Positions 30,244 through 63,079 are shown, counted from the stretch's first letter. The stretch is DNA of 64,000 nucleotides from Lytechinus pictus (GCF_037042905.1 NC_087252.1:6634001-6698000), one strand, 5' to 3'. The notes: generated by a model from the letters alone, not told the origin. Numbers and translations: made by a program.

Positions 30244-30303
30244 TTACAAGTCCAGGGTAGACGCATACACCCGTTCATCCAGGTCATTAAGTGACAGGTA
30301 GCT
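30244..30303 (-). CDS. Gene 2 last exon (SYLSLNDLDERVYASTLDL*)
   Basis: ttcacag|AGC...TAA; conserved in the paralog at 60038..60097. Confidence 0.88.
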   Translation of the reverse strand, partial: SYLSLNDLDERVYASTLDL

Positions 30304-31403
30304 CTGTGAAAATGAAATGGTAAAGACAATGCGAACAACGTTATCAACAGCAATAATATCATATGATGTCAATGGTGAATCATAAATTGGTATCGTTCAT
30401 CAGCACCGGTGTGTTGGCTCAGTTGGTAGAGCGTGAGGTCGGGGGTTCAAACCCTGGCCGCGTCTGACCAAAAGACGTTAAAAGATGGGAGTTGCTGCTA
30501 CCCTGTTTGGCGTTCAACGATTAAAGGGATAGAGCCTATTTGATCTGGCGCTGCACAGCGGCTGCAGGGCCCACGATCAATTGGGCAAAGCAAATTTTCG
30601 GAGTATTTCATTTCATGTCTATTTCGAACAATAAAATATGGAGCCAAATTTATAGTACGATAGTCGTCGGAGTTGACTATGCTGTGATCTTGTCCTTGTC
30701 CAGAACGTATAGGTATCACAGGCCTAATTCAATCCTCATAGACTCGTGTGTTTAAGTGGCACCTAAAAAGAATTCATCAAAAATAAGGAGGAAATTCGAG
30801 GGTTGAATGTTTACAACCAGTGGATAGGATAAATGTCTGACATTCCATATCTGACTAGAAACGGGTACCTCAACCGGCTCATTTTAAAAATAAATCAGCA
30901 TTTATGAAGACTACACCTGACGGGCTCAAAAACATCACTTGAGAGAGTAAAATTACCCTAATTATTCTGCCAGTAAAAATTTAGTTCCATAGTGGTGATA
31001 TATCTTTCCAATTTGGAAAAAAGAAGTTCAGTAGGTACCCTCCCTAGAATCAGTGTTAGATTGTCAATCATATTCATTCTTTTTCGTCAATCAGCAAGAT
31101 CAAATTAAAAAATTGAGCAATGGGTTGGCTCGAATGAATATCTATGGCCTGCCACTTGTGATTAGGCCCGTGCAACCTCTAGTTCTTGGCCTTTGCCTTT
31201 TAATTTGCCTTCGAGGTCTGGGGTCCTTAGCCTCGGAACTTTGGCCGCAGACGTCTAGTCCTCGGCATTGTGATTGGCCTCTTTTTTTCAGCCTTGCTCA
31301 AAACATTAATAACATTAAAATAGAGTTGTGAGGAAGGGGTTTAGCATAATCGGTGATTGTGGATTTGCATAGTAGGATATAGAGTAGGATATATAGTAGA
31401 AGG

Positions 31404-31436
<33 letters not shown>

Positions 31437-34400
31437 ATATGTATATATGTATATATATATACATGTATATGTATATATATATATACAGTGCGTCCCACAA
31501 AAAACGAAACCGAGATTTATCGATAATTTATCATAACTTAATCACAAATACAATAGACAAATGACCTACCATTGTAAAGCTTAGAATCTCCTCTTTCATA
31601 AAAAATTACCTATATTATTTCTCATTCACGCATGAATGAGCAAAAACAATTGAAGAGGGGATACCAAAAAGTCATTTGGCGGGCTGTATCTGGGTTTCAA
31701 AAAGAAAACCACATTTAAAAAAAATTCAATATCTGCTCTTTAATTTGATACCTCAATTACAGAAAATGGTCAAGAAATAACAAAGTTCTGGTTATTTGAA
31801 ATAAGGCTTGAATTTCATAAAATTAAGAGGTTCTGCAGGCTAGCGTTCAAACTCACTTGACACTCCGTTTTGTTGACGATCGGCCAGGCATTAAGTCTTT
31901 TGTTAACCATTTGATTGCTTCTGTAGGAAACCGGTGAAAACACGTTTATTTAATGAAATAATGGAAATACAAGCTTTGTTTTGAGGGAACATAACATTTT
32001 TACTTCTTGACCATTTTTGGTGATTAAGGTATCAAATTAAAGAGCAGATATTGAACTTTTTAGGCATGTGATTTTCTTTGTGAAATTCAGATACCCCCCG
32101 CCAAATGAATTTTTGGTATCCTTTCTTCAAATTGTTTTTGCTCACTCATGCGTGAATGATGAATAATCTAAGTAATATCTGATGAAAGAAGAGATTCTAA
32201 GCTTTACATTGGTAGGTCATTTGTCTGTTTTATTTGTGATTAAGTTATGATAAATCGTCGCTTAATCTCGGTTTCGTTTTTTCTGGGACGCACTGTATAT
32301 ACATATATACTATGGTTTATACAAAGGAAATGCAAACAGTAACATGGGATCAAACTGTTGGAAGAATTAGAGTTAAATCTTACATGAGTCTTTTCTAGAA
32401 TCCTTTCCAAATCCTCCAGGATTCGGTCAAAGTTGGTCCTAGATGTAGGGTCCTTCTTCCAGCAAGTACTCATAATCGCATACCTGTGAAATTAAATAAT
32501 AATTGTTTATAATATACACACTGCAGTAACGTAGCTGCCCAGAGTGGACCACGACATAATTTAACTCTGGGATGAAAATCATGGTGTTATTAACACAAAT
32601 TTGGTTTTAATATAATACATTGGATCTGTTATTAAATTACCTAAGACCTTTGAATATTTCGGAAGACAGTTTTGTGTTGTTATTAACACAGTCGTTGTTA
32701 AATGAGAAGTTCACCCTGAAGAAAAGTTTGTTGTAAAAATAATAGAAAAAAAAATCGATCACAATTTTGATGAGGCTTTGACGGAAATCCATAAAAAATT
32801 AAAAAAAGTTATTAATATTTGATTTTGTTTTTGTATTTGTGACGTCATAACATACATGTAAAATTTATAAAAGTCATATTGGTTTAGGGTAACTATACTT
32901 TTTCTTTATTCTTTCAGGAGTGGAGATGAAGTAATTTGTCTGTTGATATTCTGGAGGTAAAATAAACATTTTCCAAAGAAATTGAGAAATTGAAATTTCA
33001 TTGATTATTTTACTACATGATAAAAGATGTTGGCATATTACGTCAAAAATAAAAACACGGAAATTATGACTTTTCCTAATCTTCGATGGATATTTCTCAA
33101 ACCTTCACCAATATTTTGTTTTATTATTTCCTCTGCTATTTTTACAATGAAAATTCTATCAAGGTGAACTTTAAACTGCAAGTTTACGTTAAATCGCGTC
33201 CAATACTAAAACTCATAATTTTACTTGAGTTTATGATAAAAATAAATAATGGAGTTATTACGGATTATTATGATTATCGTCATCAATGAAATTTTGTATT
33301 CTTTTCTAATAAGCTTTCCCTTTTGTTTACGAAAGGTTTTTGATGTTAATCATTTGAGGTTATTAATGTACTAATTATTGACGATCAGCTTGTGTATCTT
33401 TCTAGAAATTTCCTTCAAAACATTATTGGTCAAGGTTAACACAACTGAATAAAACAGAAATTACACTTCTTGCGCACAGTGACGAGGGCGTTGCATCTGG
33501 TAACCCTTGGCAACCTCCGTCTGGACAGTGGTAAAGGTCATTTTAGGGTATGGCCTTGCACCTACATTTATGAGAAAAAAAAGAATGATCATGATGATAT
33601 TCTGAAATATCTGAATATTGGATGACTCCAGGTTTGATGGTTTTGTTTAAAAGAGGTGCAAGTATTAGAGTTATATCAAAGTATAGAAATTCTTCCCACT
33701 CGCATACCCCCCTCCACCCCCTTCTCTCTGCCAAGAAGGAGCTCTTTCTCATCTCTCCCTAAGTTTCCAACGAGCAAATATCTTAACATCCGTGTATTTT
33801 TCACTTTAATAGCTACATCTTTAACAATCTTGAATCCCTACATCCCAAGGCGTGTCACCGTTAGAAAAAATTATGATTTCATCATTTATTTGTGTAAGTG
33901 TAAGTAGAAGCAAAAATCAGGGTATTTGTGTAAGTAGTCATGGTTGTCAAATCATTGTTGTTGCTTTCATTTAGCCTATCATCTTCATCATTTTGTAATT
34001 CTTTCAATTATAAATATAATATAGGATTTGTATAGCGCACGTATCCACATTGCTAGGTGCTCAAGGCGCTCCTATATTATCCCGGCTAAGCTTGTCTACC
34101 GATTCCGGTGCGCACAGCCTTTGAAGAATTACTTCCTGCCGACACCCATTTACCTCACCTGGGTTAAGTGCAGCACAGTGTGGGTGAATTTCTTGCTGAA
34201 GGAAAACACACAATTATATATAATCATAATCACTACCACCATCATCGTCATTAATATTTTCTGATATATATCGTAAAAAAAAAAAAACCCAGAAAATTTT
34301 ACAGAAGAAAAAACACCCCCAGATTTTACAGAAAGAAGTAACCATGGTAACCAAATCATTCTGTAAATTGTTAAAACAGGAAAGATTTTATACATTTTTT

Positions 34401-37400
34401 ATAGAATTTTACAGAACATGTCTGTTTTAAAAAGGGGGAAAACAGTTTATTACAATAAATTTGTAAGGTTACATACACCAAATATCTATTTTCTGTAATT
34501 TTACACAAATGCATGTAAGATTACACACTGCAGTAAGATTACAGGTGTTCTCGAGACTCTGCTTCAGGAATTCAGTTTTTTTTAAGTAGAAATTTTCTAA
34601 CAGTGTGGAAATTTAAGGTCAATAAAATAAATTTACACGCGTAGCTCCTGGAACCTCCTTCCTTACCCAGTGTCACTATTTCCCACAAGACAATACCAAA
34701 AGACCAGATGTCTCCTTCTTTAGTTTGGTCATTCGTTGCCATGATTTCTGGTGAACTCCATCTGGTTGGTTTCTAAGACGATGTAAATAAATGTGTTAAT
34801 AATTCAATCGATTAAGAATATCAATCTGCACCTTTCTTAAGTAGTCAAAATGTGTTTTACAATATTTCATCATAACTATTGTCTCGTGTTATTCAATCTT
34901 CATGTATTTCGTATTAGCTAACCAGGGGCCCGTATCATGAAGAGTTTCATAAAGAGTTATAACTGTTGTAACTCTTGGTAGTTGCCAATAATGGCAACTA
35001 CCATGGCAACATGGCTTAGCAGCCAATCAAAATCAAGAATACCGTGGTAGTTGCCATAATGGCAAAGTCACAACAGGTGTAACTCCTTGATCTATGTTAA
35101 ACAATAATGAATAATCATTAGGATTAACCCGTTACACTTACAGCTACGTCACCAAAGAGCGATGAAGAAAGTCCATATTCTGATATCTTGCATTGCTTTC
35201 TTTCTCCAAGCAACACGTTGTGAGCGCAGAGAGCTCCATGGATGATCTGAAAAAAAGAAAGACAACTTATACTATAAGGACATCAAGAGAATCGTCGTGT
35301 ATCTTGATCTTTGTTGAAACTAGATCAATTTGTTCCAAACGGAGGGGATGTAAACTATGCCTTATAATAAAATATGAATGTAAGTCCCTGACGAAAATTA
35401 AGTCATCGAGTATCTTTTAAAAAGTTCTAAAAGAACAAATAAATGAGGTTTCTGGTAAACAGTGCACGGGAGCACGCAGCGGATCAGCCGCTGCAATCGA
35501 CCTGCAACACGCGGAGATTATGCCTTCCGAAAATATTTGTTAAGATATCGTGGAACATTTTTATATTTTGCATTGGTATTTTGTGACAAGAATTTTCTTC
35601 GGGGACTTTCTGAACAACCATTTTGCCAATAAAGCTCAATCAAAAGATCTATTAAAGTGGTTGGTTAACATTGGTTTGACTTTAAAGAAATCTGAGCTAG
35701 AAGGTCACACTTATCACCTGTGTCTGTGATATGTTACAAAAATGAAGCCCAGAAAAAATTGCGTTCGAAAATAATTATTTAGTGCTTCAAAAATTGAAAT
35801 ATAAAGTGACCGGAAACACCATCTTAATTTTTTACAAAATCGGGGTTTGCCTTGTAGTTTTAGCTTTTCATTCTCAATAATGGTTGTTTTCAGGGTTTAT
35901 TAGTTCTAATACATGCACTTGTACGCATGTTTCATCTTGGTTTGAGAATTTTTTAAATCGGCTGCTTACAAAGTTACACAATACCTTTAACTAAAGGTTC
36001 CAAATTCTGATAACAACATAAGCATGAAAGTTAATTATTTTTGAAATCCCATTTAACTTCCTTTTGACGTCTGATTCCTCTTCATAAGGGATACCATTAA
36101 ACGATGTTACCTTCTTAGATGCAAGGAACTGCATCCCTTTAGCAACCTGCCAAGCCAAGTTAAGTAGGGTACCCTCATCTGTACGAACACCGTTTGGTTT
36201 GAGATTGCTGTACGTGGGTCGCGATTGCACCCCTGAAGTCTGTAGATGGGTAAGGAGTGTACCCCCTGATATGAACTCGTACAGAATACTGCCTAAATGA
36301 TAGATGATTTAAAGGAAAGGAAAGGTCAACTAGGTTACGTCATGCTTAATAAATCATCTTTAGTGCAATAAAGGATAACCAGGCTTGTGCCATCACATCA
36401 GGTTATCACGTCGGGTCGGAGAATGTAGCCGACAATTCGAGAAATTTGCTATAATTTCCTCAAAGCATCAGGGACATTGGACCCGATCTTTCGGGAATGT
36501 AAAGGACCTTTTTTTCGAATCGTTTGATTTCGTGATTGCCCAACCAAAAGCAATAACCCAATGTGATGACCCAAACCCGATAAATATCTCTTAATTATAA
36601 AATGGAATGAATTGTAATGTCTCCAGCTTGGTATAAGAGAATAATGGAAACAACGTGACGTGAGCATGGTGAGAGTCTGGGAAGCATGCTCTATTCTGCC
36701 TAGCGGTCCAGAACATGATAAAACAGACATACTGTCTTTACCAATGTCATTTAATTGAGTTCCAGATTGTTAAATGTTAAACTTTGACTACCCCTCTTTC
36801 TCTCTCCCCCAAAAAGGTGTATTTTCCCATCTGCCTTTAATGTCCTAACTCTCACGTTTGAGTGCCCCTGATACCAAGGATATTGGGAAAGGAGGCTAAC
36901 CAGCACCATACCGATTATTACAGATATTTTAAGAGTAACTAATACTTTATTTCAAAGATCATAATACTTTTAATGTCGATATTATCCAAGAGGTTTTACG
37001 TACCTTGCTCCTTACAATATCCGAGACATTTGACAATATTCGGTTGATCCGATAGCTGGTAAAGTATCTTGATTGTTTGAAGTACTTGTAATGATTTTAT
37101 CACGCGATCTATGATCATAAGAAAATATTAAATCGCATGACCTATCATTTTAATGTTTTCCAAAAAAAAAATGAATTAGGATTTACTAAAATAATGACAC
37201 GATTTAAAATAACAAGCAAGCGAGATGCTGTGATTTCTTATCGGGAGTTTTTACCCATTACCAATTTCTTGGCAAGCAAAAGACAAATATAACAATTATT
37301 TTCTATCAAAAAGTGGGACATGTGCTTCTTTTGCGAACCCCTGCCCCTCTTGCCATGTTAGCCTGGTTTATCAAGGGGAAGCCAGTGGGATGAACACTAT

Positions 37401-40400
37401 TGGTTTAGTTTTCATTATTCTTGTTCAGAATGACACCGAACAATGATATGCTAATTATAAAATTCAATTTTCATTGAAATGACAAACCAAGCATTACCTT
37501 AAGATTTATATCATTGTTAAAGGCCCATGCAGTCGCGTCGTTACGTGCAAGCCTTGCGGGTAACTAATTTTCCGACCTGCATATCGTCCACGGGTCGGCC
37601 GCATCGACAGTATCACGCACACAACTCGCAGAAGAATGTGTGCTCGCAGAAAAGTTTTAACATGCTCACAAACATTTTGCGGGTGAGTTTGCGGGCATTC
37701 ACGCGCAAGGCTTGCACGGAACGATGTAACAGGGCCTTTAATAAACATTATTGAATCAATGGGCTTATCACCTGGAATTTGCCTGATAGCAACGTCGATA
37801 TGGTTTTGGTTTGAGCGGAGGTCTCCCTTCCACACCTCGCCGAAGTCACCCCGTCCAATCGAGCCAAGTCTGGTGAAGAATGTCACGTTTTCACGAGCGA
37901 TGACGAAAGAGTGGGATGAATCGAGTTGTAATGTTGTGTACGCTAAAAAATTGTTTAAGAAACATAATTATTTTCGGTAAAATACAATTATTGTCATATT
38001 TAAAACGACAAATCCAAGCAATCCATATGAACTAAAAAGAAAGGGATAGTCTTTGATGATTATATATTGAACAATGATTATATTATCAGACTCAACGCAA
38101 AAAAGGATAAAAAAGTACGCCTTTGCCTATTAGAATATATATTTTGGCGTACACAATTCGAAATTATATGATATCTATCAGTTTATGCGATGATAATAGT
38201 TGTTATAGTGTGTTAAAATAATATACTTTAGTGTTTAGATGTAAATGTTTACGTGTTTTAAAAAATAGATGTATATAATATGATTTTACTTTAAGGTTGA
38301 ATGATGAATATATACAATAGTAACAATAAAAACACCATTGTTGAAAAGTTTTCACCTCTATCTCCACTTTGAATCATCTCATAAGCCACGTTGTCATTCA
38401 TCTCCTTTGGTGTATTTACTTCATCTCTGTTTAAAAAAAATGATTAGAGTTCATTATATCTCATAAGATATAAGTCATATTTTGTTTGTAGGCATTTAAT
38501 AGCACATTTATATTCCACAACAATCATGCAGGAAACAATTATTGTAATGACCAAACGATTATAGTAACCACGGGTGATTAACCATTATACATGTACGTAT
38601 ATAATATCGTGTATATGAAACTGAACGGGATTAGGAAAAAAACGGACTTAACCGTACACTGCTGGGTTAAAGTCGTCACACTTTTTATGAAACTAACGGA
38701 CAAAAATTGCAATAGAATAAAAACGTATCTTTCCCAGAAAATAATGGAACTGAATGATTATTCATTTGTATTGTAGTAACAAATAAAAAAAGGTTTCAAT
38801 AGCTGACAATCTGTCATACATCAAATATCAATAAATCATCCGATATTTGAACTGTTTTTAACGGTCGGGTAGTTCATTAAACAAATTCATAATAACTGAA
38901 GTGAAATCATCATTTCTTTCTCTCTCTGTTAATATACATATACCTTAGTAAAATTGGGACCTAAACGTTGCATTTTTATGCAGTTGCAAAAATACTGACC
39001 GGGTATTGAGACGAAGTGAGGGGTATATGGTGATTCCAAATATCATATCAATAATGTGTTAAAGCGGGTGTTCGGTATGCGTCTTGCCTGTTCATGAACA
39101 AGGGTTTTTGGTGAGGTTGTGTGCGTATGTGTGTGTGTGTGTGTGAGAGAGAGTTTTTGCAAGGTGATTCAGGAGGGTGTGTGCGTGTAGAGGATGTGAG
39201 GTCGTGTGTCATAGATTGTTCGAGTATGGTAGAGGTTTGGGTGTGTTTGTGTGTGTGTGTGTGTGTGTGAGAGAGAAAGATTAGTGGGTGAGATGATGTG
39301 CGAGTGTGGCAGACGTTTGGGTGTTTCTGTATTTGTGTGTGTGTGAGAGAGAGGGTGTACGAGCGTGGCAGAGGTTTGGTGTGTCTGTATGTGTGGGAGA
39401 AAGAGAGAGCGGTGCGTGGATTAGAGGGTCCGCGAGTGTGGCTGAGGTTTGGGTGAGTCTGTATGTGTGTGTCTGTATGTGGTGTGTGTGAGAGAGGGAG
39501 AGGGATGGGTGAGTGTGGCAAAGGTTAGGGTGTGTCTGCGTGTGTGTGTGTGAGAGAGAGAGAGAGGGATGGGTGGGTGAGAGGGTGTGCGAGTGTGTCA
39601 GAGGTTTTAGTGAGGGTGTATGTGTGAGAGATAGAGAGGGGTGGGTGAGAGGGTGTGCGAGTGTGTCAGAGGTGAGGGTGTGTCTGTATGTAGGTGTGAG
39701 AGAGGGGTGGGTTGGTGAGGTGTGCGAGTGTGGAAGAGGTTTGGGTGTGTCTGTGTATGTGTGTGTGTGTGTGTGTGAGGAATGGGTGGTTGAAAGGGTG
39801 TGCGAGTATTGCAGATGTTTGGGTGTGTTTGTATGTGTGTGTGTGTGAGGGATGGGTGGGTTTTAAATATGTACGAGTGTGGCAGGGGTTCGGATGTATC
39901 TGTATGTGTGTGTGTGTGTGTGTGTGAGAGAGGTGGATGGGTGGATGAAAGGTTGTGTGAGGTGTGCAAGTGTGGCAGAGGTTTGGGTGTGTCTGTATGT
40001 GTGTGAGAGAGGGTGCGCGAGTGTGTCAGAGGTTTGGGTGAGGTTGTATGTGTGCGAGATAGAGAGGGATTGGTTGGTGTGCGAGTGTGTCAGAGGTTTG
40101 GGTGTGTGTGTGAGAGAGAGAGCGGTGCATGGGTTAGAGGTTTAGTTGAACGGATATGTGTGAATGTGTGTGCATTTGAAAGGTACTAAGGTTGAGAGAG
40201 GGTGTAAGAGCGCTTGTGAGATTATTTTGTGTGTGAATGGGTAAGGAAGTGTGTATTTTGTATGTGCTGAAATTAGAGAATGTGCCTGTGCGAAAAGATG
40301 ATTTGGAGTTAACAAAGACTTGTGTGCAGTAATGAGTCATTGTAGGCCTGTAGAATGACAGAGTGGGTGTTTCCGTGGATGGGTGCGCCAGTGCGTGTGA

Positions 40401-43400
40401 TAAAAAAAAAATGTTTTTCCTTCCACTTACCCTTTTTCATTCATCTTTGACCCATCGAACTCTAGTGAATATGAATACAAAAAACACGTTGGGAATATAG
40501 TGATAAGAAAAGAATGATCCATGTGTAAAGTGAAATGGGAAACATATTGAGTTCACCCTAGAAAAAATACGTCTTGTTGAAATAAACATAACTTAATAGG
40601 TTACTTAGTGTCCATTTAACTTTCCTATGTAGTCAAGAAAAACAAGAGTGAAACAAGCACATTCTCTAGATTATTTTATCTTCTTTTTATTTTCATGTAA
40701 TAGCTATTTCAATAGAAATGATGACCAACAATCACCTGGTTTAGTCCTTCTCCTTAGGAGTACGAACTGTACAATGTTGATGATGATAGAAACTACTAGA
40801 AGGATTGCTAAGATAGCTATTCCAGCAGATGCTCCAGACCTCAAACCAGTCAGTGAACGTGGACATGGAGTGCATGTAGGCTCAGATGTGATGGATGTGG
40901 TCTCTGGTTGATAATCAATGTTTTAAAAACAAGAAACATACGTATTCGACATAGTGTATTACACGCCCGGGGGTGTTTCACAAAGATCTAAGTATGACTT
41001 AGAGTTACACTTAATTGCCGACGCGTTCATGTTTTGTGACGTGCAATCTTATTGATTACTAGGCAATAGAGCGCGACCTCTTAGCATGATCTGACCAACG
41101 CGGTCATGCCTTTATAACGCATGGAACTAGGCATTTAAGTGCGACTCTACATCATACTTACATCTTAGTGAAAGCCCCCCCGTTTTATTTGAACTTGTCT
41201 ATTTCAACTTTCGATCCACTATTTCAAAGTCCACCCTAGAAAATTGTTGATTTGGTTAAATAGAGAATAATCAAAGTAGCATAATGCTGACAATTTCATC
41301 AAAATCGGATGTAAAATGAGAAAGTTATGACATTTTAAAGTTTCTCTTATTTTTCACAAAACAGTGATTTGCACAATTCAGTGACATGCGAATGAGACAG
41401 TTGATGATGTCTTTCACTCACTATTTCTTTTGTTTTTATTGTTTGAATTATACATTATTTAATTATAGTATTAAACAATGATAATTCCACATGTTCAGGG
41501 AGGTATCATTCGTTGCTTCACTTGACAGTGAGGAGAAATTATAATATTTCGTAGTTCAGATAATAAAATACCAAAGAAATGGTGGATGATATCATCAGTC
41601 TCCTCATTTGCATATCAATTAAGCAAAACTTTAAAATGTCATAACTTTCTTATTTTACAACCGTTTTTTATGATATTTTCAGTGTTATTCTTGATGGATT
41701 CTTCTCTTTTTATTCAAATCAACTTTTTGTTGGGGTGGAACTTGTCCTTTAAGTTTGATTTTCACTCAAAAATTCATACAGCAACCACACCCCTTTTTTC
41801 TGGCACCGATTAGTAAGATCGCGTTATGCAATACAAAAATCATAGATAAGATAATGTTGCATCAGTGTCACTTAAAATTAGGAAATATCTCTCAAACGCG
41901 AACAAATACGATTTGACCATGTTGCTGCGTGCCAATCTTGTTCGGACATATCCTTTATTAAAAAGGCAACTTCAAGGCTTTTAGAAACCAATCAGTCCCA
42001 ATTCCCTTCCCTTGTGATAAAAACATGTTACCAAAACTTGCTTTCTGTAGTATATCTTCAATGCAACTCAACCGTGAACTGCATAGTTGGATCTTGGTGC
42101 ATAAAAACCAAGCTACAAATCAAGAAAGTGTACTTGATCTCCTCCCCTGTCACAATTCTGAGCCAAATTCCAACCATTCTACAACTAATATAACTTAATA
42201 AAGTGTAGCGCCCAGTTTCTCCATATGCCATGGCATCTGGAGTAAACTTAGTTACCCGTAAAATTGTTCTCAAAAACCTTCTGTGGAAAATTTCGATTTG
42301 AGCAATATCTTCATAGTCACATACTTACCCATTCCCATCCCCATACACACCCATATGTCAGTATTGGTAAAATTATCTGAATAAATTATTCACACTGTGT
42401 ATCAATTGACAGTTGTAAATCTTTTTGTTTTTGCTAATAACATGAATAAAGTGTACAAAGCTTTCCTTGCCGTTGATTTATACTTATATTATGCTATTCT
42501 TTACTTTGACCCAAGTCAAAACAGGTATCAGGGAGTAATTGAGTAGAATTTATAAAAATGTCCTTTTTCATCAGAATACACGGTACGCCGTGATAACCAC
42601 CATATTTTCCTGTTTGCTGATATTGAGAATTTTGCTGATATTGTGTAAAATATGACATTTTCGGTAAAATGTTATGTAAAATATGATTTCTTATTTCCCT
42701 TTTCCCACGTTCTTACGAATATGCTTTAAACATGATAAAGGTATTCAATTATTTTAATTAAACGAAGAAGTTTGAGCGCTAATAGCTTTCGGGCCTAGTT
42801 AACTTGTACCAGGGAGTTGGGAGTACTCTAATCCCATCTCCCTGCTTGTTTTACCCTAAGAAAAATGCAATTGAAATACGTTTAGGGAAGCCCAGATTAA
42901 ATTCAGCACCATCAGAACGAGGAAATTCATACGCGGTTAACTGTCGTTCACACACAAGTACATAATATAAAACGGAGCTTGAATTTTACATCGGTAGATG
43001 TGTTGTTCGTTAACATATTTGCCGATTAAAGTAGCAAGGATAGCCTGGCTCAATGCACATCTTTTGAAATTGATCAAGCTACAACATTTCATCACTTATC
43101 AGCATATGCTTCTGTACATTTGAAAATCTATTGAAATTCTTTAAAATGGACTAGCGTTCCTGTCTCGTCTTAAGCATTTAAACACGTTTGAGTACAAAGT
43201 CTAAGACCTGTTACTGCCATTTTGTTTCAAAATCATCCAAGTAGATACTAATAATGACAATAATAATAACATGCAACATGTGCAGATACGTACTATGGTA
43301 GCTCTAAAAAAGCGGTGCATTTTATTATCCAAATTTGCACGTGAAAATAACCCATGCTCAGAAGATACAATAGTCTTGTGGCAAGCATCTAGAGTGTATA

Positions 43401-52400: not shown

Positions 52401-55400
52401 TTCTAGAAAACCATCACACGGGGCAGGATCATCACCTAGCATCAATGTAAGTGTTTCTTGTGGTCTACCTCCTGTAGCTCTGCACGTTGCTATGTATACA
52501 TCAGCATCATCTGCAATAGCACTTCCAATCGTCAATGATGATGTTGATTGGACTGAAAATACAATGTGATTTTTTTTATCTTTACATGGTATGTCTACTG
52601 ACATTAATCTATTTTCAATGATACTACAAATTATTTTAATACCACTATTTTCCGAAACATGAACATTTAGATTATCTTTTAGCATTCATATGGTGTGTTC
52701 GTTCTCCACCAAAAAAAAATAAAAAATAAATAAATAAATAAAACGTAGAACACCTCTTGCATTTAAAAGTTTTTGCAAGAAACATATTTGTGTCAGTGTC
52801 AGTTAAAGATAAGGTGTTGATGAATATAACTTGAATTTATCATCTTTATTTAACCTACCTTCTACTTTAAGTTCCTTGACATCAGTCTCCAATGGCCCTG
52901 AGAAGCATTTATACCGTCCTTCATCGTCTATCTGTGAATTAGTGATTGTCATAGTGGATTGGGGATAAGCAACACCCGTCTGTGATACATCAAAATTGTC
53001 ATATTTTGTAGCTTCTGTTGGGTGGGTTCTGAGTATACCTCTGAAAATATCAACATTTGGAACAACTGAGACATCTGTCCATTTAAATACGCCTCCTATG
53101 CCTATAGAATCAGGGGTCTGTCCGCATTTGTAAACTGCATCATGTCCTTGCTCTACCGCGGAAGGTCCGTTGAAAGCCAAAAGTGACTGGCTGTTCGCAA
53201 GTTCTATGAACTTCAAAAAATCAATAAACAAGAATATAAACAAGATGTTATGTAAATGAGAAACAATGAGAAATACCTTTGGTCCTATGTATCGGAGGGA
53301 GGGGGTAAAGTTTGCTATACCCCTCTCGCAAACACGTGTCAAAACCACCACAACGCGTTTAATTGATTGCCAATTTATAAACTATTTACATGATTTGATA
53401 ATTCCCACGCGTTTTATTCTCCATTCTTACTTCTTTTGTGAATCAAAACCCCGTAAAGCATATAAAAAAATGCCCTTTAGCGATAAATAAAAAATCGATT
53501 GAATTATAATTGAAATGTGAAAAAAAGCGAATGATAAAGACGAAAACATATGGGCCTAAGCTCTATCTTTATTCGATTTCTTTAAAGACAAAGACCGGAT
53601 AAAAAAAATTGAAACTGAAAATGTGAAATCCTATAAACTAGTAACATGACAGAGCACATCAATGTATGTTTCATGGATGTCAATGGCTTGGCAGCTGAGC
53701 ATTTTGTCTAAGAAAAAAGAACAAATCAGGATCGAAAATTACATAAAATCATAATCATACTCATAAGCCAGGAGGGTTGTGATTAGATATATTTGTATGT
53801 ACATGCAAATAAGATCATTATTTTCTTGGTTTCCAGATTTTGAATTTTTTTTTTTACAATCCACAGAGGAAAGTATTGACTAGATTTTTTGTTTTTTCTC
53901 TGATTGGCCCTTATTTGGCATAAATTGTTATGTCAGAAACTGTTCAACAATTGATTCGGCTGACAAATTCAAAACAGCCCTTAAAATATGTAAAACCTTT
54001 AATATTCAAATTGTACCTCAGCTCTATTAAGTGAATTCACAACTGTTCTTTTTCTTTTCTTTATTTTCGTAAGGGCTTGTAGATATATTTATTATGTGTT
54101 ATGCAATAGGCCCTATATAAATAATGACTATTACTATTCTATCATCATTATCATTATCTACTTCAAGAGAAAACGGAATATTGAACATGGCAAAAACTAA
54201 TCCACAGCTGTAGATTTCCTTATGTTAGGTCTTCAAAAGAAAATCTATTTGTGATACCGATTGGTATGGAAGTAAAAAAATTCAGGTTACAGTTCGTTTT
54301 TCCAAAGGTTCGTACCTCCGAAACCCGTAAATTGCTAGATATCTTGATTTCGTAACAAAAATGAAAATGGGTTCATTCATCCGAAACTTTGTGGCGTTAT
54401 TCCGAAGGTTTGTTAGTCAAAAAACGAAAAAAGATTCGTTAGTCCAAACACGAAATAAAATTCGTTAGTCCGAAAATAAAATATAGTTCGTTAGTCTGAA
54501 ACTGAAATAGTCTATGTCGAAGCCGGGAAAATGGAAGGGCAGGCTTGAAGGGGGAGGGGGGGGGGGGGGGAGAATCACAGTTGCTATTAATTTGTTATGA
54601 GTATGGAAAGAGCTACTCTATCGTTACCGGGGCGATTTATACGTACGAAGGATTTTCTCGAAGCGGGTGATCATAGACTTATGGTGCTTGTTAATTTTCA
54701 TGCAGGAATCGATATCATGTTTGTGTCTGATTGGGGCCTGGATCCTGTCCACGGAGGATTATTTTATTGTTACTGGGGGAGCTGAGCATTGTCACAGTGG
54801 CCAGGTCCATGATGGGGGCGTGGGAAAACAGCAATCTGCAGCCATCGTAGCCAGCTTTATGGAAGGGGGGGGGGGACAGTTATTTCGCATTATTTCATTT
54901 TCGGAATAATGAACCTTCGGAATAATAAACCTCGTTTCGTTTCCGGACTTATTTACCTTCGGAAAAACGAACCTTTGAAATAATGAGCCCTTGTAGTAGT
55001 CGAATCTTTGGAATAACCGACCTTCTGAAAAACGAATGTATCCCCGAAAATGTTTTCGAGGCTGAAAGTGATATGAACAGATAAAGTATTCGCAGACTCA
55101 CAAACAGTGATAAACATGCATGAAAATATTTTGAATAAGAACAAAGGAAAGTGGGGACATGACATCATCAAAGTCCAATAACTGAATTATTTTTTTATCC
55201 TATTTTCACTTTCTGAAAGTGGTTTTTATTCTTTATCTTTTTATTTACATCGGTAGTCTGAAGTACCCCCTTTAAAATATAATCTCATTTAGTGTCGCGT
55301 ACAATAAGATTATATTAAAAAAGCTCTTGCCATTGTGTTATTGGTTTCATAATGTACGTCCCATGCTGAGATTAAGTAAATGCGTTCTCTCGGTATATTT

Positions 55401-55680: not shown

Positions 55681-57037
55681 GAATAATAGGAATCACTCGA
55701 CCTTTTCTACCATGTTACGCGATGGGAAGGGGGGGGGGGGGGGTGCGCTTAGTTATTAAATACCATAAACGCTCAATGGCATATTTAGTACTAATTATTT
55801 ATCTGTCTCTGCCCTTGCCTTTTCTAATCATTTTAATCAATCCCAATCGATTACCATTTTCTGAGTTTTATACGAAACATACATTTTGCTATATAATCTA
55901 AACATGGAAAAAAATGTATGTCCAAATGTCCAAGTAACGCGAATTTAGGATCTACGATCCATGACATTTGCTCCACACAATAAAGGAATGACCTAGTTCA
56001 ACCCTGGATTTAATACTATACGCTATCCTAAACGTAATAACCCTAACCTTAACCCCAGCCCTAACCATAGGCCTATATCTTAGACGAAAAAAACCCGGAG
56101 CAGTTGTCGCCAGAGCAAATGTCGTGTCGCCACTTACACTCTACCGACAATCTTCTCAATGGTGAAATCAGTATCTCGTCCAACACCCCTGCATCATGTG
56201 CATGCACTTGCAAGAACCCTTTTTTCAGATATTTTTTTTAAAATAATAATTCAGGCCCATTTTCGTTAATTGTCTTTATTTCGATGGATTGTTTTGTATT
56301 ACTCGGTATTTCAGAACGAAAGTGTTTTGATTGATTGGTTGCATTTATTCTTTTCTTAGTTGTAGTATAAAAGAAGATTCTTCCCAGAAGCTTATTTTAA
56401 TTAATAGACATCACGACAAACGATCGCTATATTTGCCCAGGTTACCGTCGCATATTTCAGTAACTACCCGAATGTTGCTGTGTGTTGGCACCTTCTCATT
56501 CGGCCAATACGTGGTACACCCCCCACACACACACAGACACACTTTTAAAACTTCCCACAGTTCCTGCGTTTTCATAAGCTCTTATGAGCGCGGTCGATTC
56601 GTGAAAGGAAAATAAATAATGCCCAAAAAAACCCCAGCTCGGCCATGATAATTTCCATCCACCCCTCCCAAATTTAGTGAGGGTCGTCAGGAACCAAATA
56701 TCAGTCTGTGCTGCGCATTGCCTGAAAATTTGGTCGCTTTGCAAGAATGTAGTGATTTGACCTAAATCACATTCATTTTCAAAAGACATCATATAACAGT
56801 CAGTAGTTATATGAAAGGGGAAGTCAACATGGCCAAATAGATGAAGACAGGGCGTACTGGTCCTGAATAGTGCAAGTTTACGACATTTTTTTTACGCAAT
56901 TGAATGACGCTATACTGCCATGAAACGACGAAATAAATAGGACGTAATTTCGCCACTTTCTTTACAATGCATTTTTGATGTTGAATGTATTATATTGTAA
57001 TAAAATGAATGTTTACTTGGCAGGAATGTTAAAAGTA

Positions 57038-57516
57038 ATTTGTTAACAAATTTTCGGCATTACTTCTATTTGTTTCAGATCAGTATGCTCGATCTGTAAA
57101 TGAAAAATCATAAGATCAGCATGCTCGATCTGTAATGAAAATCATAAGGAAATCATTAAAAAAAGCCTCTTAATTTACTATCTATTGTCCACGGCGGAAG
57201 GTATTTGAATACTAATGAGTCAGAAAGAAGAGGATCGAGGGTATTTGAATTCCAGTTCATCGTGGCTTAGCCGTGAACCAGAATAGCCTGGAGGTTGAGT
57301 CGCTGCCCGGAAAGCAGTAGATGGCAGGTTCGAATCCCACTGGTTCCAATTTTTCCTGACTTATGATCTTATGATTTTCATTACAGATCGAGCATACTGA
57401 TCTTATGATTTTCATTTACAGATCGAGCATACTGATCTGAAACAAATAGGAGTAATGCCGAAAATTTGTTAACAAATTTTAATTTCTTCCTATGAAAAAA
57501 AGCCTCTTAATTTACT
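57038..57516 (+). mobile_element. Non-autonomous retro-insertion with tRNA-like core, 5' inversion and terminal direct repeat (Penelope-like architecture)
   Basis: 13-bp TSD AATGTTAAAAGTA; ~110-bp inverted repeat; 23-bp direct repeat; tRNA-like 57275..57347 followed by TTTTT. Confidence 0.65.
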
Positions 57517-60037: not shown

Positions 60038-60097
60038 TCACATATCAATAGCAGACGCATACACCCGTTCATCCAAGTCATTTAGAGACAGGTAACT
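60038..60097 (-). CDS. Gene 3 last exon (SYLSLNDLDERVYASAIDM*)
   Basis: ttcacag|AGT...TGA. Confidence 0.88.
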   Translation of the reverse strand, partial: SYLSLNDLDERVYASAIDM

Positions 60098-63079
60098 CTG
60101 TGAAAATTAAAAGATAAGGACAATGAGAAGACTGTTAACTATAACAATATGATGTCATTAATGATGAATTATAAATCATGTAAATAGATATCATTCAGCA
60201 TTGTTCATCAAGCAAATTCATAACTGGATGTTTTGTTTTACATTTCAATACTGTTAATGAATTTAAATCAACATCAAAAGTTACAAAGTTATTACAAATG
60301 CAAATCATAAAAAGGGGAGAAGAAAAACAAACGTTTACGAAGTAAAGGGGGGATATGCGACGAATTAATTACTCAAATTAAATATCTGCATTTGAAAATA
60401 AAGAGCAGGCTTGTCTGTTATCCTTAAAATAGATAACACTCTATTCATAGTGGAGGTTGCTTAGCATGGCTCAATTATTATAGGCGGTTTGCTTAGTATA
60501 ACAATATAATTAACACACTCATATGTGGGCCTCTGGTTGTAAAGGAAAGGTGCATAACAGCAGGAAATCAAACTGTTTGGAAGAAAGAAATATATTTTAG
60601 TCTTACATGAGTCTTTTCTAGAACCCTTTCCAAATCCTTCAGGATCAGGTCAAAGTTGGTCCTATTTGTAGGGTTCTTCTCCCAGCACCCAGTCATAATC
60701 GCATATCTGTGATATAAGATAAGGATTCTTTATGTGCACTTCGATAACCATTTTAGTCAGCCACAACAGTCATTTTGCACGAATATTACATTTGTGGTTT
60801 TATTTCAGCACCCATATTTGGTTATTTTAACGCATTAGGATTATGGTTACTCGGAGGACGGATTGTCGTTCTTCACACTGTATAGCACTCACTGTATATA
60901 GTAGTTTTACACTTAATTACGCCTAAAACTTCCACTAATGTATTTTAGTAAGATTCCCAATGGCATCCTTTTATTGGAATTCATGAAGAGAGATAAATCA
61001 AAAGATAAGATATAAAGAAAGACTTTGCTGCTCTGAATATTATAAGATACCTGGAACTATTACCAATATTTATCTAGTCAATGTTACATCTTATCAAAAT
61101 CACATCACTTTTAGCATTAATCGTGGCGCCAGTTATTAAGTATTATATAAATTTATTCATTTACAAAGCTGTCTACTTTTATTTACATTTATATTTCTGT
61201 AACCCGATTGGGATTATTAAAATGATATATTTTCATATCATGATCAACTTGTTCATCTTTCATTATATTTTCTTTAAAAACACTTATTGCTCAAGGTTAA
61301 GACGGCTGAGTAAAATTGAAATTACACTTCTTGTGCACAGTGACGAGGGCGTGGCATCTGGTAACCATTAGCAACCTCCGTCTGGACAGTGGTAAAGGTC
61401 ATATTAGGGTATGGCCTTGCACCTATCAGAATAAAGGAAATTAGCATGATGATATTCTGAAATATATGAATATTGGACATTTCCAAGTTTTTGTACCGTT
61501 TAATAGAGCTGAAAATATTGCTTTAATATATTTATTCAAGCATTATAGTAAATAACTCTTCACATCTTCAATTAAAACTTTCAGCGTTTGCGTGTATTCT
61601 TCATTTGAATAAGTTTATCTATATCTTAGATCCCTTCAACATGTCCGACATCACACGGCGTTTCAATTTTAAGAACAATTCTGATTTCATCACCTTCCAA
61701 AGCGTATTGAGTATTAGTATTGTTTTAATGTCTCTGTCACTGTTTGAGGCATGTTATAACTAAGTAAAAGCAAAATCGAGGTAGTAGTACAGTAGTAATG
61801 GTAGTCAAGGTTTTGTTGTTGCTTTTGTTTCATTAAGCCTATTATCATTATCATTTTATCCTCGACAATTCGTGTATTTCACAACCACCATCATTACCAT
61901 TACTATTTTCTGATATATACTGTAGATATGGAAATGTAATGTCATAGGCTAGTAAACGTTTACACTCAGTTCGAATAAACAGAAGATATTACTAAAAGAA
62001 ATAAACAAATCATTCTTTAAATTGTTATGACAGGAAATATTTTTTACAATTTCACAGAACAGGTCTGTTTAAAGGAAAAGGGAGAAAAGTTTTATTACAA
62101 TAAATTTGTAACGTTCACCAGATACCCATTTTCTCTGATTTTACTTAAATGTATCTAAGATTACACAGTGCAGTACGATTTCTGGTATTCTCAGGACTCT
62201 GCTGCTGGAATTTTTGTTGTTTTAAGTAAACATTTTCTAACAGTGCACGCGTAGCTTCTGTAACCTCATTTCTTACCTAGTGTGACAATTTCCCACAATA
62301 CGATACCAAATGACCAGATGTCTCCTTCTGTTGTTTGATCACCCGTTGTCATGGTTTCTGGTGAACTCCATCTTTTAGGTTTCTGGGACGGTGTACAAAT
62401 TGCACATAATCGTATGATCGCGATACTTCAAACGATTAGAAATTACAATATATAGTTAACGTAATATATCACATATGTATACTGGCCGAATTAGGTATTG
62501 AAAGACTGGTAAAATTGCAGGCTTGGGAAAGAAGTCACAAGTCTCGAGTCTTCAGGTCTCAGCTCCGTTATCAGATTTTAGCATTTATCTTCAAAAAAAG
62601 GAGAAAGAGCTTAAAGCAAACCAAAAACCAGGGGCGGATCAAGGATTTTTTTTAAGGGGGTGGGCACATTTTTCCGACGAAAATTTTACAAGCCAAAAAA
62701 AAAAGTTTTTTTTACCAAAAAATTAATGATATTTCGTCCCCGAAAAAAAGTTGGCAAGCATGCAAAAAAAAAACAACAACAACAACAACAAAGGATTCAG
62801 TTAAAAAAAGGAGGGAGGGCCCACACTTCAGTTTTAATGGCATTTCACATTACAAACTTTAATCTTGCTTCTCAAGGGGGGGGGGGGGTCACGGGCCGGC
62901 AGCCTCCCCCCACGGATCCGCCAGTGCCAAAACATATAACATTTATTATTGTTAGGCAAAACGATCATACCTACAGCTACGTCACCAAAGAGTGATGGAG
63001 AAAGTCCATAGTCTGATATCTTGCATTGCTTTCTTTCTCCTAGTAACACATTGTGAGCGCAGAGAGCACCATGGATGAT
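60038..63079 (-). CDS. Gene 3 (5' part outside window): tandem paralog of gene 2; join(63079..62975,62382..62277,61422..61326,60706..60607,60097..60038)
   Basis: Exon sizes identical to gene 2 (105,106,97,100,60), same phases, no stops or frameshifts. Confidence 0.88.
60607..60706 (-). CDS. Gene 3 kinase XI
   Basis: cacag|A TAT; YAIMTGCWEKNPTNRTNFDLILKDLERVLEKTH|gtaaga. Confidence 0.9.
61326..61422 (-). CDS. Gene 3 kinase X
   Basis: gatag|GT; GARPYPNMTFTTVQTEVANGYQMPRPRHCAQEV. Confidence 0.9.
62277..62382 (-). CDS. Gene 3 kinase VIII-IX
   Basis: tcccag|AAA; KPKRWSSPETM...GDIWSFGIVLWEIVTL; G|gtaaga. Confidence 0.9.
62629..62926. mobile_element. Short hAT-like MITE in a gene 3 intron
   Basis: CAGGGGCGGATC...GATCCGCCAGTG; CCAAAA-starting flank duplication. 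Confidence 0.5.
62975..63079 (-). CDS. Gene 3 kinase VIb-VII (IIHGALCAHNVLL...KISDYGLS)
   Basis: ttattgag|ATC...GCT|gtaggt. Confidence 0.88.

What the first reader, a model, noticed from the sequence alone, without database searches (positions are those of the whole stretch)
30244..63079. Tandem family of Ig-V receptors coupling an ITAM-like motif to a dead tyrosine kinase domain
Seen: gene 2 splices cleanly into SP-IgV-Ig-Ig-stalk-CxxC-TM-YEMI(x6)YTTL-kinase fold-YLSL tail, and a same-strand paralog ends about 4.5 kb upstream of its ATG. Established: V-type Ig plus ITAM is the logic of vertebrate immunoreceptors, which recruit Syk/ZAP70 after Src phosphorylation. The well-known RTK pseudokinases (PTK7, ROR, RYK, ErbB3, EphA10/B6) are not built this way. 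Inference: an RTK-derived receptor that replaced its own catalysis with SH2-kinase recruitment and expanded as a tandem array, i.e. a candidate invertebrate-deuterostome immune or allorecognition receptor family. Automated annotation would probably label it FGFR/RET/TIE-like and miss this.
Basis: partly seen in the sequence, partly recalled or inferred. Interest (0 to 1): 0.9.

Follow-up and report, generated by a model that had tools for sequence, protein, structure and literature searches.

The report
Sea urchin Ig-receptor pseudokinase gene family
A gene cluster in the painted sea urchin encodes surface receptors with three nectin-like Ig domains outside and a catalytically dead tyrosine-kinase domain inside that keeps a conserved pair of docking tyrosines; databases label the family 'FGFR/Tie-like', I found no paper describing it, and its proposed immune role is untested.

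Summary
Window = Lytechinus pictus C8:6,634,001-6,698,000. On the minus strand, 53424-30244, I rebuilt a stop-free 15-exon, 739-aa gene: signal peptide, V-type Ig, two more Ig domains, Cys-pair stalk, TM, juxtamembrane YEMI-x6-YTTL, tyrosine-kinase fold, YLSL tail. All introns are GT-AG. Transcript contigs confirm six junctions, including the one that sets the x6 spacing.

The kinase is dead by sequence: VAIK Lys to Arg, alphaC Glu to Thr, HRD to HGA, DFG to EYG.

The gene belongs to a same-strand array of at least 9 copies over 0.47 Mb. The upstream copy (60038-63079) carries two in-frame stops outside the window. Relatives with the same dead motifs were found only in sea urchins (Lytechinus, Strongylocentrotus, Diadema). 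Active HRD/DFG relatives occur in starfish, a crinoid, an acorn worm and amphioxus.

Kinase exons are under purifying selection (dN/dS about 0.2-0.4) and appear homogenised between copies. Ig exons evolve near neutrality (0.6-1.1).

The di-tyrosine motif is invariant in Lytechinus and Strongylocentrotus; in Diadema the spacing is x9.

Syk recruitment and an immune or allorecognition role remain untested, and no tissue expression data were obtained. The scan noted the same family on other DNA of this genome (s1-311554).

The parts
53409..53424 (-). Gene 2, exon 1: ATG (53424) plus 5 codons (MENKT, R split). Tentative.
   Evidence: Read directly. It resembles the N-terminus of paralog P0021. It is in frame with the acceptor at 53284. 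No RNA support.
52859..53284 (-). Gene 2: signal-peptide core plus V-type Ig domain (Cys59-Cys132, 73 residues apart).
   Evidence: Pfam V-set E=0.0029, below cut-off. Cys spacing. The paralog model has a 9-strand first domain. No close paralog of this exon exists in the genome; the best are 41% and 35%.
52244..52552 (-). Gene 2: Ig domain 2 (C2-set, CD80-like), a phase 1-1 exon.
   Evidence: Pfam C2-set_2 E=0.0016. Splice sites.
44617..44889 (-). Gene 2: Ig domain 3, a phase 1-1 exon.
   Evidence: Homologous to Ig3 of P0021 (69%) and P0017. No Pfam hit when scanned alone.
40736..40903 (-). Gene 2: stalk with the CTPC Cys pair, transmembrane helix (with Asn and Gln inside), RRRTKP stop-transfer.
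   Evidence: Sequence. The donor at 40736 is joined to 40461 in an X1 contig.
40431..40461 (-).
   Evidence: X1 contig joints skip 274 and 2004 bases. Sequence. The equivalent residues are present in P0017 and P0024.
38356..38426 (-). Gene 2: juxtamembrane exon ending ...NDNVAYEMIQSGDR, carrying the first tyrosine of the ITAM-like motif.
   Evidence: The joint 38356|37942 is seen in an X1 contig. Conserved in paralogs.
37772..37942 (-). Gene 2, kinase exon 1: AYTTL (second tyrosine), Gly-rich loop GRGDFG, and VAIR in place of VAIK.
   Evidence: Pfam PK_Tyr_Ser-Thr positions 6-36. Alignment. Joints.
37004..37108 (-). Gene 2, kinase exon 2: alphaC helix without the conserved Glu (Thr here), then beta4.
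   Evidence: Found. Joints 37108|37772 and 37004|36292. Alignment to EGFR and to active relatives.
36111..36292 (-). Gene 2, kinase exon 3: hinge, short insert, alphaE.
   Evidence: Pfam positions 78-122. This was the query that found the array.
35142..35246 (-). Gene 2, kinase exon 4: HGALCAHN in place of HRDLAARN, and EYG in place of DFG.
   Evidence: Pfam positions 123-152. Alignment. The joint 35246|36111 appears in X1 and in 3 raw RNA reads.
34667..34772 (-). Gene 2, kinase exon 5: short activation segment without tyrosine, SPE, alphaF.
   Evidence: Pfam E=2.8e-10. Alignment.
33465..33561 (-). Gene 2, kinase exon 6.
   Evidence: Pfam positions 203-232. Splice sites.
32384..32483 (-). Gene 2, kinase exon 7 (end of the C-lobe).
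   Evidence: Pfam positions 234-258. Splice sites.
30244..30303 (-). Gene 2, tail exon: SYLSLNDLDERVYASTLDL plus stop.
   Evidence: The tail motif is conserved in the whole clade and in active relatives.
60038..63079 (-). Gene 1 (upstream paralog), last five exons: about 63079-62975, 62382-62277, 61422-61326, 60706-60607, 60097-60038. This part is intact, but the gene has in-frame stops in its K3 and TM exons beyond the window's end, so it is a probable pseudogene.
   Evidence: blastn and tblastn against gene 2. TAG in the K3 copy at C8:6698218-6698397. Stop in the TM exon.
35500..36080 (.). Repeat element inside the K3-K4 intron. It is not part of the gene, but it accounts for almost all the RNA-seq depth on this stretch.
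   Evidence: Depth of 400-1100 on both strands, with many variants and loose ends at 35830/35831.

Best explanation
Gene 2 is an apparently intact member of a sea-urchin-specific, tandemly expanded family of type-I receptors. The ectodomain has three Ig domains arranged like nectin/Necl (V-C2-C2), followed by a membrane-proximal Cys pair and a TM helix. The cytoplasmic part is a tyrosine-kinase domain derived from an orphan deuterostome RTK clade that has lost the catalytic Lys, alphaC Glu and HRD Asp.

Shown: the gene structure, the dead motifs, the array, the conservation of the cytoplasmic module and the faster evolution of the Ig domains.

Inferred mechanism: the receptor cannot phosphorylate anything itself and works as a phosphotyrosine scaffold. 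Ligand or cell-contact binding by the variable Ig domains would cluster the (possibly disulfide-linked) receptor. A separate kinase, either a Src-family kinase or an active RTK partner, would then phosphorylate the disordered juxtamembrane pair (YEMI-x6-YTTL) and the tail YLSL. SH2 proteins would dock there. A tandem-SH2 Syk-family kinase is one candidate, but it is no better supported than Src-family, PLC-gamma-type or SHP-type SH2 proteins. The folded pseudokinase domain is kept as a dimerisation or docking module.
For: - Gene model and junctions. Six junctions confirmed by contigs 97-98% identical to gene 2 and at most 91% identical to any paralog in the K1, K2 and TM exons.
- Dead motifs in all 40-odd family members, against HRD/DFG in starfish, crinoid, acorn-worm and amphioxus relatives.
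- In gene 2 even the DFG Asp is Glu, while its L. variegatus counterpart keeps Asp.
- Kinase fold predicted with pTM 0.79; top structural matches are Tie2, Met and FGFR.
- The juxtamembrane segment carrying both tyrosines has pLDDT below 50, so it is predicted to be a free linear motif.
- The core E-ND--AYEMIQ-G--AYT-L-L is invariant in 10 Lytechinus and Strongylocentrotus sequences, while the 30 residues before it vary. YEMI--G is invariant down to Diadema.
- Chance of the pattern in shuffles: 3.6e-4.
- dN/dS for the kinase is 0.18-0.33 (gene 2 against others) and about 0.4 among G4-G8, against 0.6-1.1 for the Ig exons.
- The ectodomain model matches Necl-4, nectin-1 and Necl-5.
- Syk-family genes are listed for S. 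purpuratus and L. variegatus in PMC13344425.
Against: - There is no biochemical evidence that the tyrosines are phosphorylated or bind anything.
- Nucleotide binding was not tested. The Gly-rich loop, the catalytic-loop Asn and, in most copies, the DYG Asp are retained, so a non-canonical activity cannot be excluded.
- No expression data tie the family to any tissue. Three raw RNA-seq runs of the species hold only 1-4 reads on the exons, and no RNA run was listed for the IgV exon.
- The Ig-to-TM junction and the start codon of this particular copy rest on homology alone.
Confidence: 0.55

Rival explanations
1. This is a bona fide ITAM immunoreceptor: the doubly phosphorylated YEMI-x6-YTTL recruits the tandem SH2 domains of sea-urchin Syk, and the family serves immune or allorecognition functions in coelomocytes.
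For: - The motif fits Yxx[I/L]-x6-8-Yxx[L/I] in Lytechinus and Strongylocentrotus. The Diadema form fits the x6-9 consensus used for Hydractinia Alr proteins.
- In Diadema the second YxxL is shifted by 3 residues with no length change. That looks like turnover that preserves a nearby second YxxL.
- Syk-family genes exist in sea urchins.
- The family is a tandem array with fast-evolving Ig domains and a homogenised signalling module.
- An older L. pictus protein (P0021) has an ectodomain absent from this assembly, hinting at haplotype or copy-number variation.
- There is precedent for Ig families with ITAMs in invertebrates (PMC9546547).
Against: - No expression or binding data.
- Spacing is not fixed across echinoids (x6 against x9).
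- YEMI also resembles the Src-family SH2 optimum pYEEI (my own knowledge, not tested here).
- Two echinoid sister subfamilies of pseudokinases (P0007 with sushi domains; P0008/P0048) lack the juxtamembrane pair.
- dN/dS near 1 in the Ig exons is equally consistent with relaxed constraint. No site-level test of positive selection was done.
Confidence: 0.2
2. An ErbB3/PTK7-like co-receptor. The dead kinase domain pairs with an active RTK, which phosphorylates ordinary RTK docking tyrosines: a juxtamembrane site like FGFR1 Y463 and a tail site like FGFR1 Y766 or RET Y981. The ITAM look is then incidental.
For: - Active relatives share the tail D-Y-[IL]-x-L-x-x-L-D-E-x-x-Y and carry juxtamembrane tyrosines in aligned positions: GYQSL and AYEDV in amphioxus, VYESI and TYSNV in Asterias.
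- The positions match known RTK docking sites (my own knowledge of FGFR1 and RET, not tested here).
- The pseudokinase domain is strongly conserved, as expected of an allosteric partner.
Against: - No close active sister kinase was found in the L. pictus genome; the best match to the amphioxus-type HRD exon is 52-56%.
- The alignment of the disordered juxtamembrane region is not reliable.
- The spacer between the two tyrosines is 13-17 residues in the active relatives but 6-9 in the pseudokinases.
Confidence: 0.2
3. Mainly an adhesion molecule. The nectin/CADM-like ectodomain mediates cell-cell adhesion in development or the nervous system, the pseudokinase is an inert or cytoskeletal anchor, and the tandem copies reflect neutral duplication.
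For: - The best structural matches of the ectodomain are Necl-4, nectin-1 and Necl-5.
- Sequence searches also retrieve 'cell adhesion molecule 3-like' proteins through the Ig part.
- At least one array member is a pseudogene.
Against: - Purifying selection acts on the kinase, juxtamembrane and tail segments, with invariant tyrosines across species.
- The cytoplasmic exons appear homogenised between copies (dS 0.02 against 0.07-0.33 for G5/G7), which argues that the module matters.
Confidence: 0.12

Closest known systems
Receptor pseudokinases of the RTK class (PTK7/CCK4, ErbB3, ROR, RYK, EphA10/EphB6)
   Same: A type-I receptor with a tyrosine-kinase fold that has lost catalytic residues. PTK7 also has an all-Ig ectodomain. 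They are presumed to signal as scaffolds or co-receptors.
   Different: This family is not orthologous to any of them; the nearest solved kinase is Tie2 at about 33% identity. It has three nectin-like Ig domains rather than seven. Lys, Glu and HRD-Asp are all replaced. It is a tandem array of 9 or more copies restricted to sea urchins. It carries a conserved di-tyrosine ITAM-like juxtamembrane motif.
ITAM-bearing immunoreceptors and adaptors (FcR-gamma, DAP12, CD3-zeta, Fc-gamma-RIIA; Drosophila Draper; Hydractinia Alr proteins, PMC9546547)
   Same: Ig-type ectodomain (or partner) plus a cytoplasmic Yxx[LI]-x6-9-Yxx[LI] in a disordered segment. As with Alr and many vertebrate families, the genes form a clustered multigene family.
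   Different: Here the motif sits between the membrane and a folded 270-residue pseudokinase domain, not in a short tail. Function is untested. Spacing varies between sea-urchin orders.
Orphan deuterostome RTKs with the tail motif D-Y-[IL]-x-L-x-x-L-D-E-x-x-Y (amphioxus P0049 and P0013, Asterias P0052, Acanthaster P0054)
   Same: Closest sequence relatives of the kinase domain (34-37% identity to the S. purpuratus family member P0003). The tail motif is the same. Asterias P0052 also has an Ig ectodomain with a Cys-rich stalk.
   Different: They keep VA[IV]K, the alphaC Glu, HRD, DFG and a longer activation loop with tyrosine. Their two juxtamembrane tyrosines are 13-17 residues apart.
Nectin / nectin-like (CADM) adhesion molecules
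   Same: A V-C2-C2 three-Ig ectodomain. These are the top Foldseek matches (Necl-4, nectin-1, Necl-5; TM about 0.5-0.66).
   Different: Sequence identity is only 16-19%. Nectins have a short afadin- or 4.1-binding tail and no kinase fold.
Tie2, RET, FGFR (the labels given by automatic annotation)
   Same: The same tyrosine-kinase fold, and the best solved-structure matches: Tie2 170 bits, RET about 150 bits.
   Different: Different ectodomain architecture: no EGF or FN3 (Tie), cadherin (RET), or acid box with I-set ligand site (FGFR). No catalytic residues. No activation-loop tyrosines.

Membership tests
Protein tyrosine kinase fold (Pfam PF07714) | Sequence match over the whole domain and a bilobal kinase fold | tested here: met
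   Exon-wise Pfam hits cover profile positions 6-36 and 78-258; the alphaC exon (found) fills the gap. A paralog model has pTM 0.79, with Tie2, Met and FGFR as top Foldseek hits at E about 1e-21.
Catalytically competent protein kinase | beta3 Lys (VAIK), alphaC Glu, HRD Asp, DFG Asp | tested here: not met
   Gene 2 has VAIR, Thr, HGA and EYG. Every family member has Arg, no Glu, and HG[ATSNLH]. Most keep DYG. Activity itself was not assayed.
ITAM | Yxx[L/I]-x6-8-Yxx[L/I] in an accessible cytoplasmic segment | tested here: met
   YEMIQSGDRAYTTL at residues 423-436. The spacing is fixed by the splice 38356|37942, seen in a transcript contig. The same pattern is in 14 Lytechinus and Strongylocentrotus sequences. 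The segment is predicted disordered.
ITAM | Spacing and both tyrosines conserved in orthologs | tested here: inconclusive
   Invariant within Lytechinus and Strongylocentrotus. In Diadema the first YEMI is invariant, but the second YxxL lies 3 residues further on, giving x9. Two sister pseudokinase subfamilies lack the pair.
ITAM | Phosphorylation by Src-family kinases and binding of Syk/ZAP-70 tandem SH2 | not testable with these tools
   The only support is the literature listing Syk-family genes in S. purpuratus and L. variegatus (PMC13344425).
V-set immunoglobulin domain | Match to the V-set profile, long inter-cysteine distance, C' and C'' strands | tested here: inconclusive
   Gene 2 domain 1: Pfam V-set E=0.0029, 18.2 bits against a cut-off of 26; Cys-Cys distance of 73 residues. 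Paralog P0017 carries a precomputed V-set hit, and its model has 9 strands in domain 1.
PTK7/CCK4 | Seven Ig domains and orthologous pseudokinase domain | tested here: not met
   Three Ig domains. PTK7 is not among the 60 best solved-structure matches shown.
FGFR / Tie / RET (database labels) | Family-specific ectodomain and one-to-one orthology of an active kinase | tested here: not met
   The ectodomain is nectin-like. Kinase identity is 25-34% to all three. The family is a lineage-specific array of dead kinases.
Nectin/Necl family | V-C2-C2 ectodomain with short cytoplasmic tail binding afadin or 4.1/PDZ proteins | tested here: not met
   The ectodomain fold matches, but the cytoplasmic part is a pseudokinase. 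The resemblance is in architecture only.

The most novel reading that the evidence does not exclude
Sea urchins run a recognition system (immune or self/non-self) built on a dead RTK. Diversifying nectin-like Ig ectodomains are coupled, through gene conversion of a shared 3' module, to a pseudokinase scaffold whose juxtamembrane ITAM recruits Syk. That would be an independent, RTK-derived solution to the receptor-plus-ITAM logic of vertebrate immunoreceptors.
Probability: 0.18. Interest if true: 0.85.

Novelty: new variant of a known kind. Interest (0 to 1): 0.62.

Why it matters
Receptor pseudokinases and ITAM receptors are both well known, but I found no description of a family that combines them.

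The family has dozens of predicted members in at least five sea-urchin species. All carry misleading automatic names (FGFR-, Tie-, Cad96Ca-, Fer-like).

If the di-tyrosine motif is a working ITAM, this would be a new route by which an animal lineage assembled an Ig-receptor-to-Syk pathway. It would also provide candidate non-TLR/NLR recognition receptors in echinoderms.

Even on the cautious reading it is a clean natural case of an RTK clade turning into scaffolds while staying under selection. L. pictus is genetically tractable, so the question is testable.

Tried and rejected
- Signal-peptide exons at 55168-55102 and 55967-55883: both create a stop codon when spliced to the IgV exon. I could not reproduce an ATG 4.5 kb below the paralog's end.
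- A hidden micro-exon between Ig3 and TM, as exists in paralog G7: none was found in gene 2 by homology or by pattern. Direct Ig3-to-TM splicing is in frame.
- Evidence that the Ig exons are expressed: no RNA run was listed for the IgV exon. Raw RNA runs X2-X4 gave 1-4 reads on the kinase exons, and those differ from gene 2 at 6 positions, so they are probably from paralogs.
- The ectodomain of the L. variegatus counterpart P0024: it is not in the window. Its L. pictus match lies 1.1 Mb away at C8:7.78 Mb, so that model may be chimeric or the locus rearranged.
- A close active sister kinase in L. pictus: not found.
- Literature: seven full-text searches found no description of the family. The two 2006 sea-urchin kinome and RTK papers are not held, so I cannot exclude a mention there.
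- Decaying pseudogene family: rejected because of dN/dS of 0.2-0.4 and conservation down to Diadema.
- I did not run a complex prediction. I had no tool-derived Syk sequence, and phosphotyrosine cannot be modelled there.


Full report
**Place and organism.** The window is C8:6,634,001-6,698,000 of an 811.7-Mb assembly. The contig length, 42,376,555 bases, is the one recorded for NCBI proteins of Lytechinus pictus that belong to this family. The organism is therefore the painted sea urchin.

**Gene model.**
- Open frames on the minus strand, splice-site enumeration, a search for the missing alphaC exon and direct reading of three boundaries give 15 coding exons from 53424 to 30244.
- The model is 2220 nt and 739 codons, has no internal stop, and has GT-AG at every intron.
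- Domain order: Met plus a long hydrophobic signal peptide; a V-type Ig domain with cysteines 73 residues apart; two further Ig domains on phase 1-1 exons; a stalk with CTPC; a TM helix; a 31-nt micro-exon; a juxtamembrane exon ending ...AYEMIQSGDR; seven kinase exons; and a tail exon SYLSLNDLDERVYASTLDL.
- Pfam on single exons gives V-set and C2-set_2 just under threshold, and PK_Tyr_Ser-Thr for the kinase exons.
- The ATG exon (53424-53409) is tentative. It rests on the resemblance of MENKTR to MEGRTKR at the start of paralog P0021 and on frame compatibility.
- Other upstream candidates create stop codons.
- This ATG lies 6.6 kb, not 4.5 kb, below the upstream paralog's stop.

**RNA evidence.**
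- Contigs of one run (X1; RNA status guessed by the tool, and a different organism label from the window's species) join 40736|40461, 40431|38426, 38356|37942, 37772|37108, 37004|36292 and 36111|35246.
- The skipped lengths (274, 2004, 413, 663, 711, 864) equal my introns exactly.
- These contigs are 97-98% identical to gene 2. No L. pictus paralog exceeds 91% in the K1, K2 and TM exons, so the contigs come from gene 2's allele or its ortholog in a close relative, not from another array member.
- The junction that creates the x6 spacing is thus confirmed.
- Three raw RNA-seq runs of the species hold only 1-4 reads on the exons.
- No RNA run was listed for the IgV exon. The Ig-to-TM link in this copy is therefore inferred from the annotated full-length paralogs and orthologs P0017, P0018, P0019, P0033 and P0035.

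**The kinase is dead by sequence.**
- Alignment with EGFR and with active relatives shows VAIK to VAIR, alphaC Glu to Thr (Ala, Gly, Ser, Met, Val, Arg or Ile in the others), HRDLAARN to HGALCAHN, and DFG to EYG.
- The activation segment is shortened by about 8 residues and has no tyrosine.
- Every family member I retrieved has Arg, no Glu, and HG[ATSNLH]. Most keep DYG. Gene 2 alone has EYG, while its L. variegatus counterpart P0024 keeps Asp.
- The Gly-rich loop and the catalytic-loop Asn remain, so nucleotide binding cannot be judged.
- An AlphaFold model of paralog G7's cytoplasmic part gives a confident kinase fold (pTM 0.79).
- The nearest solved structures are Tie2, Met and FGFR at 25-34% identity. 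By sequence, Tie2 scores 170 bits and RET about 150. No orthology with a described RTK is apparent.

**The di-tyrosine motif.**
- YEMIQSGDRAYTTL fits Yxx[LI]-x6-8-Yxx[LI].
- Shuffling the 57-residue juxtamembrane segment produces such a pattern in 0.036% of trials.
- The same pattern, with I/V, D/N and T/S/A variation only at non-consensus positions, is present in paralogs G1, G3, G5, G6, G7 and G8 and in 14 database proteins of L. pictus, L. variegatus and S. purpuratus.
- In an alignment of ten of these, E-ND--AYEMIQ-G--AYT-L-L is invariant while the preceding 30 residues vary.
- In Diadema (six sequences) YEMI is kept, but the second YxxL sits three residues further on with no length change, giving x9.
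- The segment is predicted disordered, with pLDDT below 50.
- Two sister pseudokinase subfamilies lack the pair: P0007 with sushi domains, and P0008/P0048 with a single IgV. P0008/P0048 and the active amphioxus relatives instead have an ITAM-consensus pattern in the tail, Y[IL]xL-x7-8-Yxx[LI].
- Active relatives also carry juxtamembrane tyrosines that MAFFT places under the two sea-urchin ones, 13-17 residues apart. That alignment of a disordered region is weak.

**Family and array.**
- The K3 exon finds nine same-strand copies on C8 between 6.67 and 7.14 Mb at 90-95% protein identity, one on C17 (70%), and two distant ones. K1 gives the same picture.
- The IgV exon of gene 2 has no close relative in the genome; the best are 41% and 35%.
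- Array members G4-G8 have their own IgV and Ig2 exons 15-41 kb upstream of their K3 exons.
- The upstream neighbour, gene 1, has intact last five exons in the window. It carries TAG in K3 (W*VAKGM) and a stop in the TM exon just beyond the window, so it is probably a pseudogene.
- Database relatives with the dead motifs come only from echinoids: Lytechinus, Strongylocentrotus and Diadema.
- Starfish, crinoid, acorn-worm and amphioxus relatives are active by sequence.

**Evolution.**

| Comparison | Region | Value |
|---|---|---|
| Ten pairs among G4-G8, mean dN/dS | IgV | about 0.9 |
| | Ig2 | about 0.6 |
| | Ig3 | about 1.1 (median 0.86) |
| | kinase | about 0.4 |
| Gene 2 against others, dN/dS | kinase | 0.18-0.33 |
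| G5 against G7, dS | kinase | 0.021 |
| | stalk/TM | 0 |
| | IgV | 0.073 |
| | Ig2 | 0.16 |
| | Ig3 | 0.33 |
| Gene 2 against others, dS | kinase | 0.25-0.38 |
| | Ig exons | 0.9-1.7 |

- Codon alignments were taken from tblastn hits to the P0017 template, and rates are Nei-Gojobori estimates.
- Synonymous divergence is far lower in the 3' module than in the Ig exons.
- The signalling module is therefore constrained, and it appears to be homogenised between copies, which I read as gene conversion.
- The Ig domains diverge near neutrality. No site-level test was done, so positive selection is not shown.

**Ectodomain.** A model of G7's ectodomain has three Ig domains. Its best matches are Necl-4, nectin-1 and Necl-5, then CD22 and SIRP-alpha.

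**Literature.**
- Seven searches found no description of such a family.
- The 2006 sea-urchin kinome and RTK papers are not held.
- PMC13344425 lists Syk-family proteins of S. purpuratus and L. variegatus.
- PMC9546547 describes an invertebrate Ig family with ITAMs and uses an x6-9 consensus.

**Reading.**
- What is shown is the structure, the loss of catalytic residues, the array and the pattern of constraint.
- What is inferred is that the receptor signals as a phosphotyrosine scaffold, phosphorylated in trans.
- The specific ITAM-Syk and immune or allorecognition reading is possible but untested.
- An ErbB3-like co-receptor role, using inherited RTK docking tyrosines, is about equally likely.
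- The same family was noted by the scan on other DNA of this genome (s1-311554, the G8 region).

Noticed in passing
window 35500-36080: A repeat element in the K3-K4 intron has RNA-seq depth of 400-1100 on both strands. It shows many variant positions and hundreds of loose ends meeting at 35830/35831, so the expressed copies elsewhere carry about 30-40 extra bases there.
   Followed up: no
window 1459-1794 (+) and 23011-23400 (+): Exon-like open frames of a plus-strand gene. One is a strong HYR domain (E=2e-23); the other is a weak C-type lectin piece (E=0.003). Further frames at 13740-14069 and 19829-20197 look like discoidin and lectin by eye but gave no Pfam hit.
   Followed up: partly
window 39050-40150: About 1.1 kb of degenerate GT/GA-rich low-complexity repeat (GC skew +0.5; periods of 68-157) lies inside the micro-exon-to-JM intron.
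   Followed up: no
window 40750-40830 (TM exon) and paralogs: The TM helix keeps an Asn and a Gln (N-[IV]-[IVL]-Q-F) from Lytechinus to Diadema. The stalk keeps a Cys pair (CTPC, PCPC, CDC, CPCSC). Both hint at TM-mediated association and disulfide-linked dimers.
   Followed up: no
P0013, P0049 (amphioxus), P0008 and P0048 (sea-urchin subfamily B): The C-terminal tail of active relatives and of a second pseudokinase subfamily itself fits an ITAM consensus (for example YINL-x7-YTSL, YLSL-x8-YTDI). In gene 2's subfamily the second site has decayed to YAST.
   Followed up: partly
P0021/P0016 (older L. pictus proteins) against G000: Their Ig domains are closest to gene 2's (43-69% identity per exon), but no better match exists anywhere in this assembly. 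This suggests either a very divergent haplotype or a copy missing from this individual or assembly.
   Followed up: partly
G000:C8:7779875-7783659: The ectodomain of L. variegatus P0024, whose cytoplasmic part is the counterpart of gene 2, matches this place 1.1 Mb away at 80-85%. No kinase exon was detected nearby. Either the model is chimeric or the two species are arranged differently.
   Followed up: partly
G000:C8:7237151-7239593 (+): IgV and Ig2 exons of the same type lie on the opposite strand about 0.1 Mb beyond the last array member. This may be a further, inverted copy.
   Followed up: no
window 63399-63813 and 29389-29807: A 420-bp repeat, 79% identical between its two copies. One copy is in gene 1's K3-K4 intron and the other is just downstream of gene 2's stop.
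   Followed up: no
window 8009-8807 and 9671-10297: Two arrays of a 178-bp tandem repeat in opposite orientation, about 900 bp apart.
   Followed up: no
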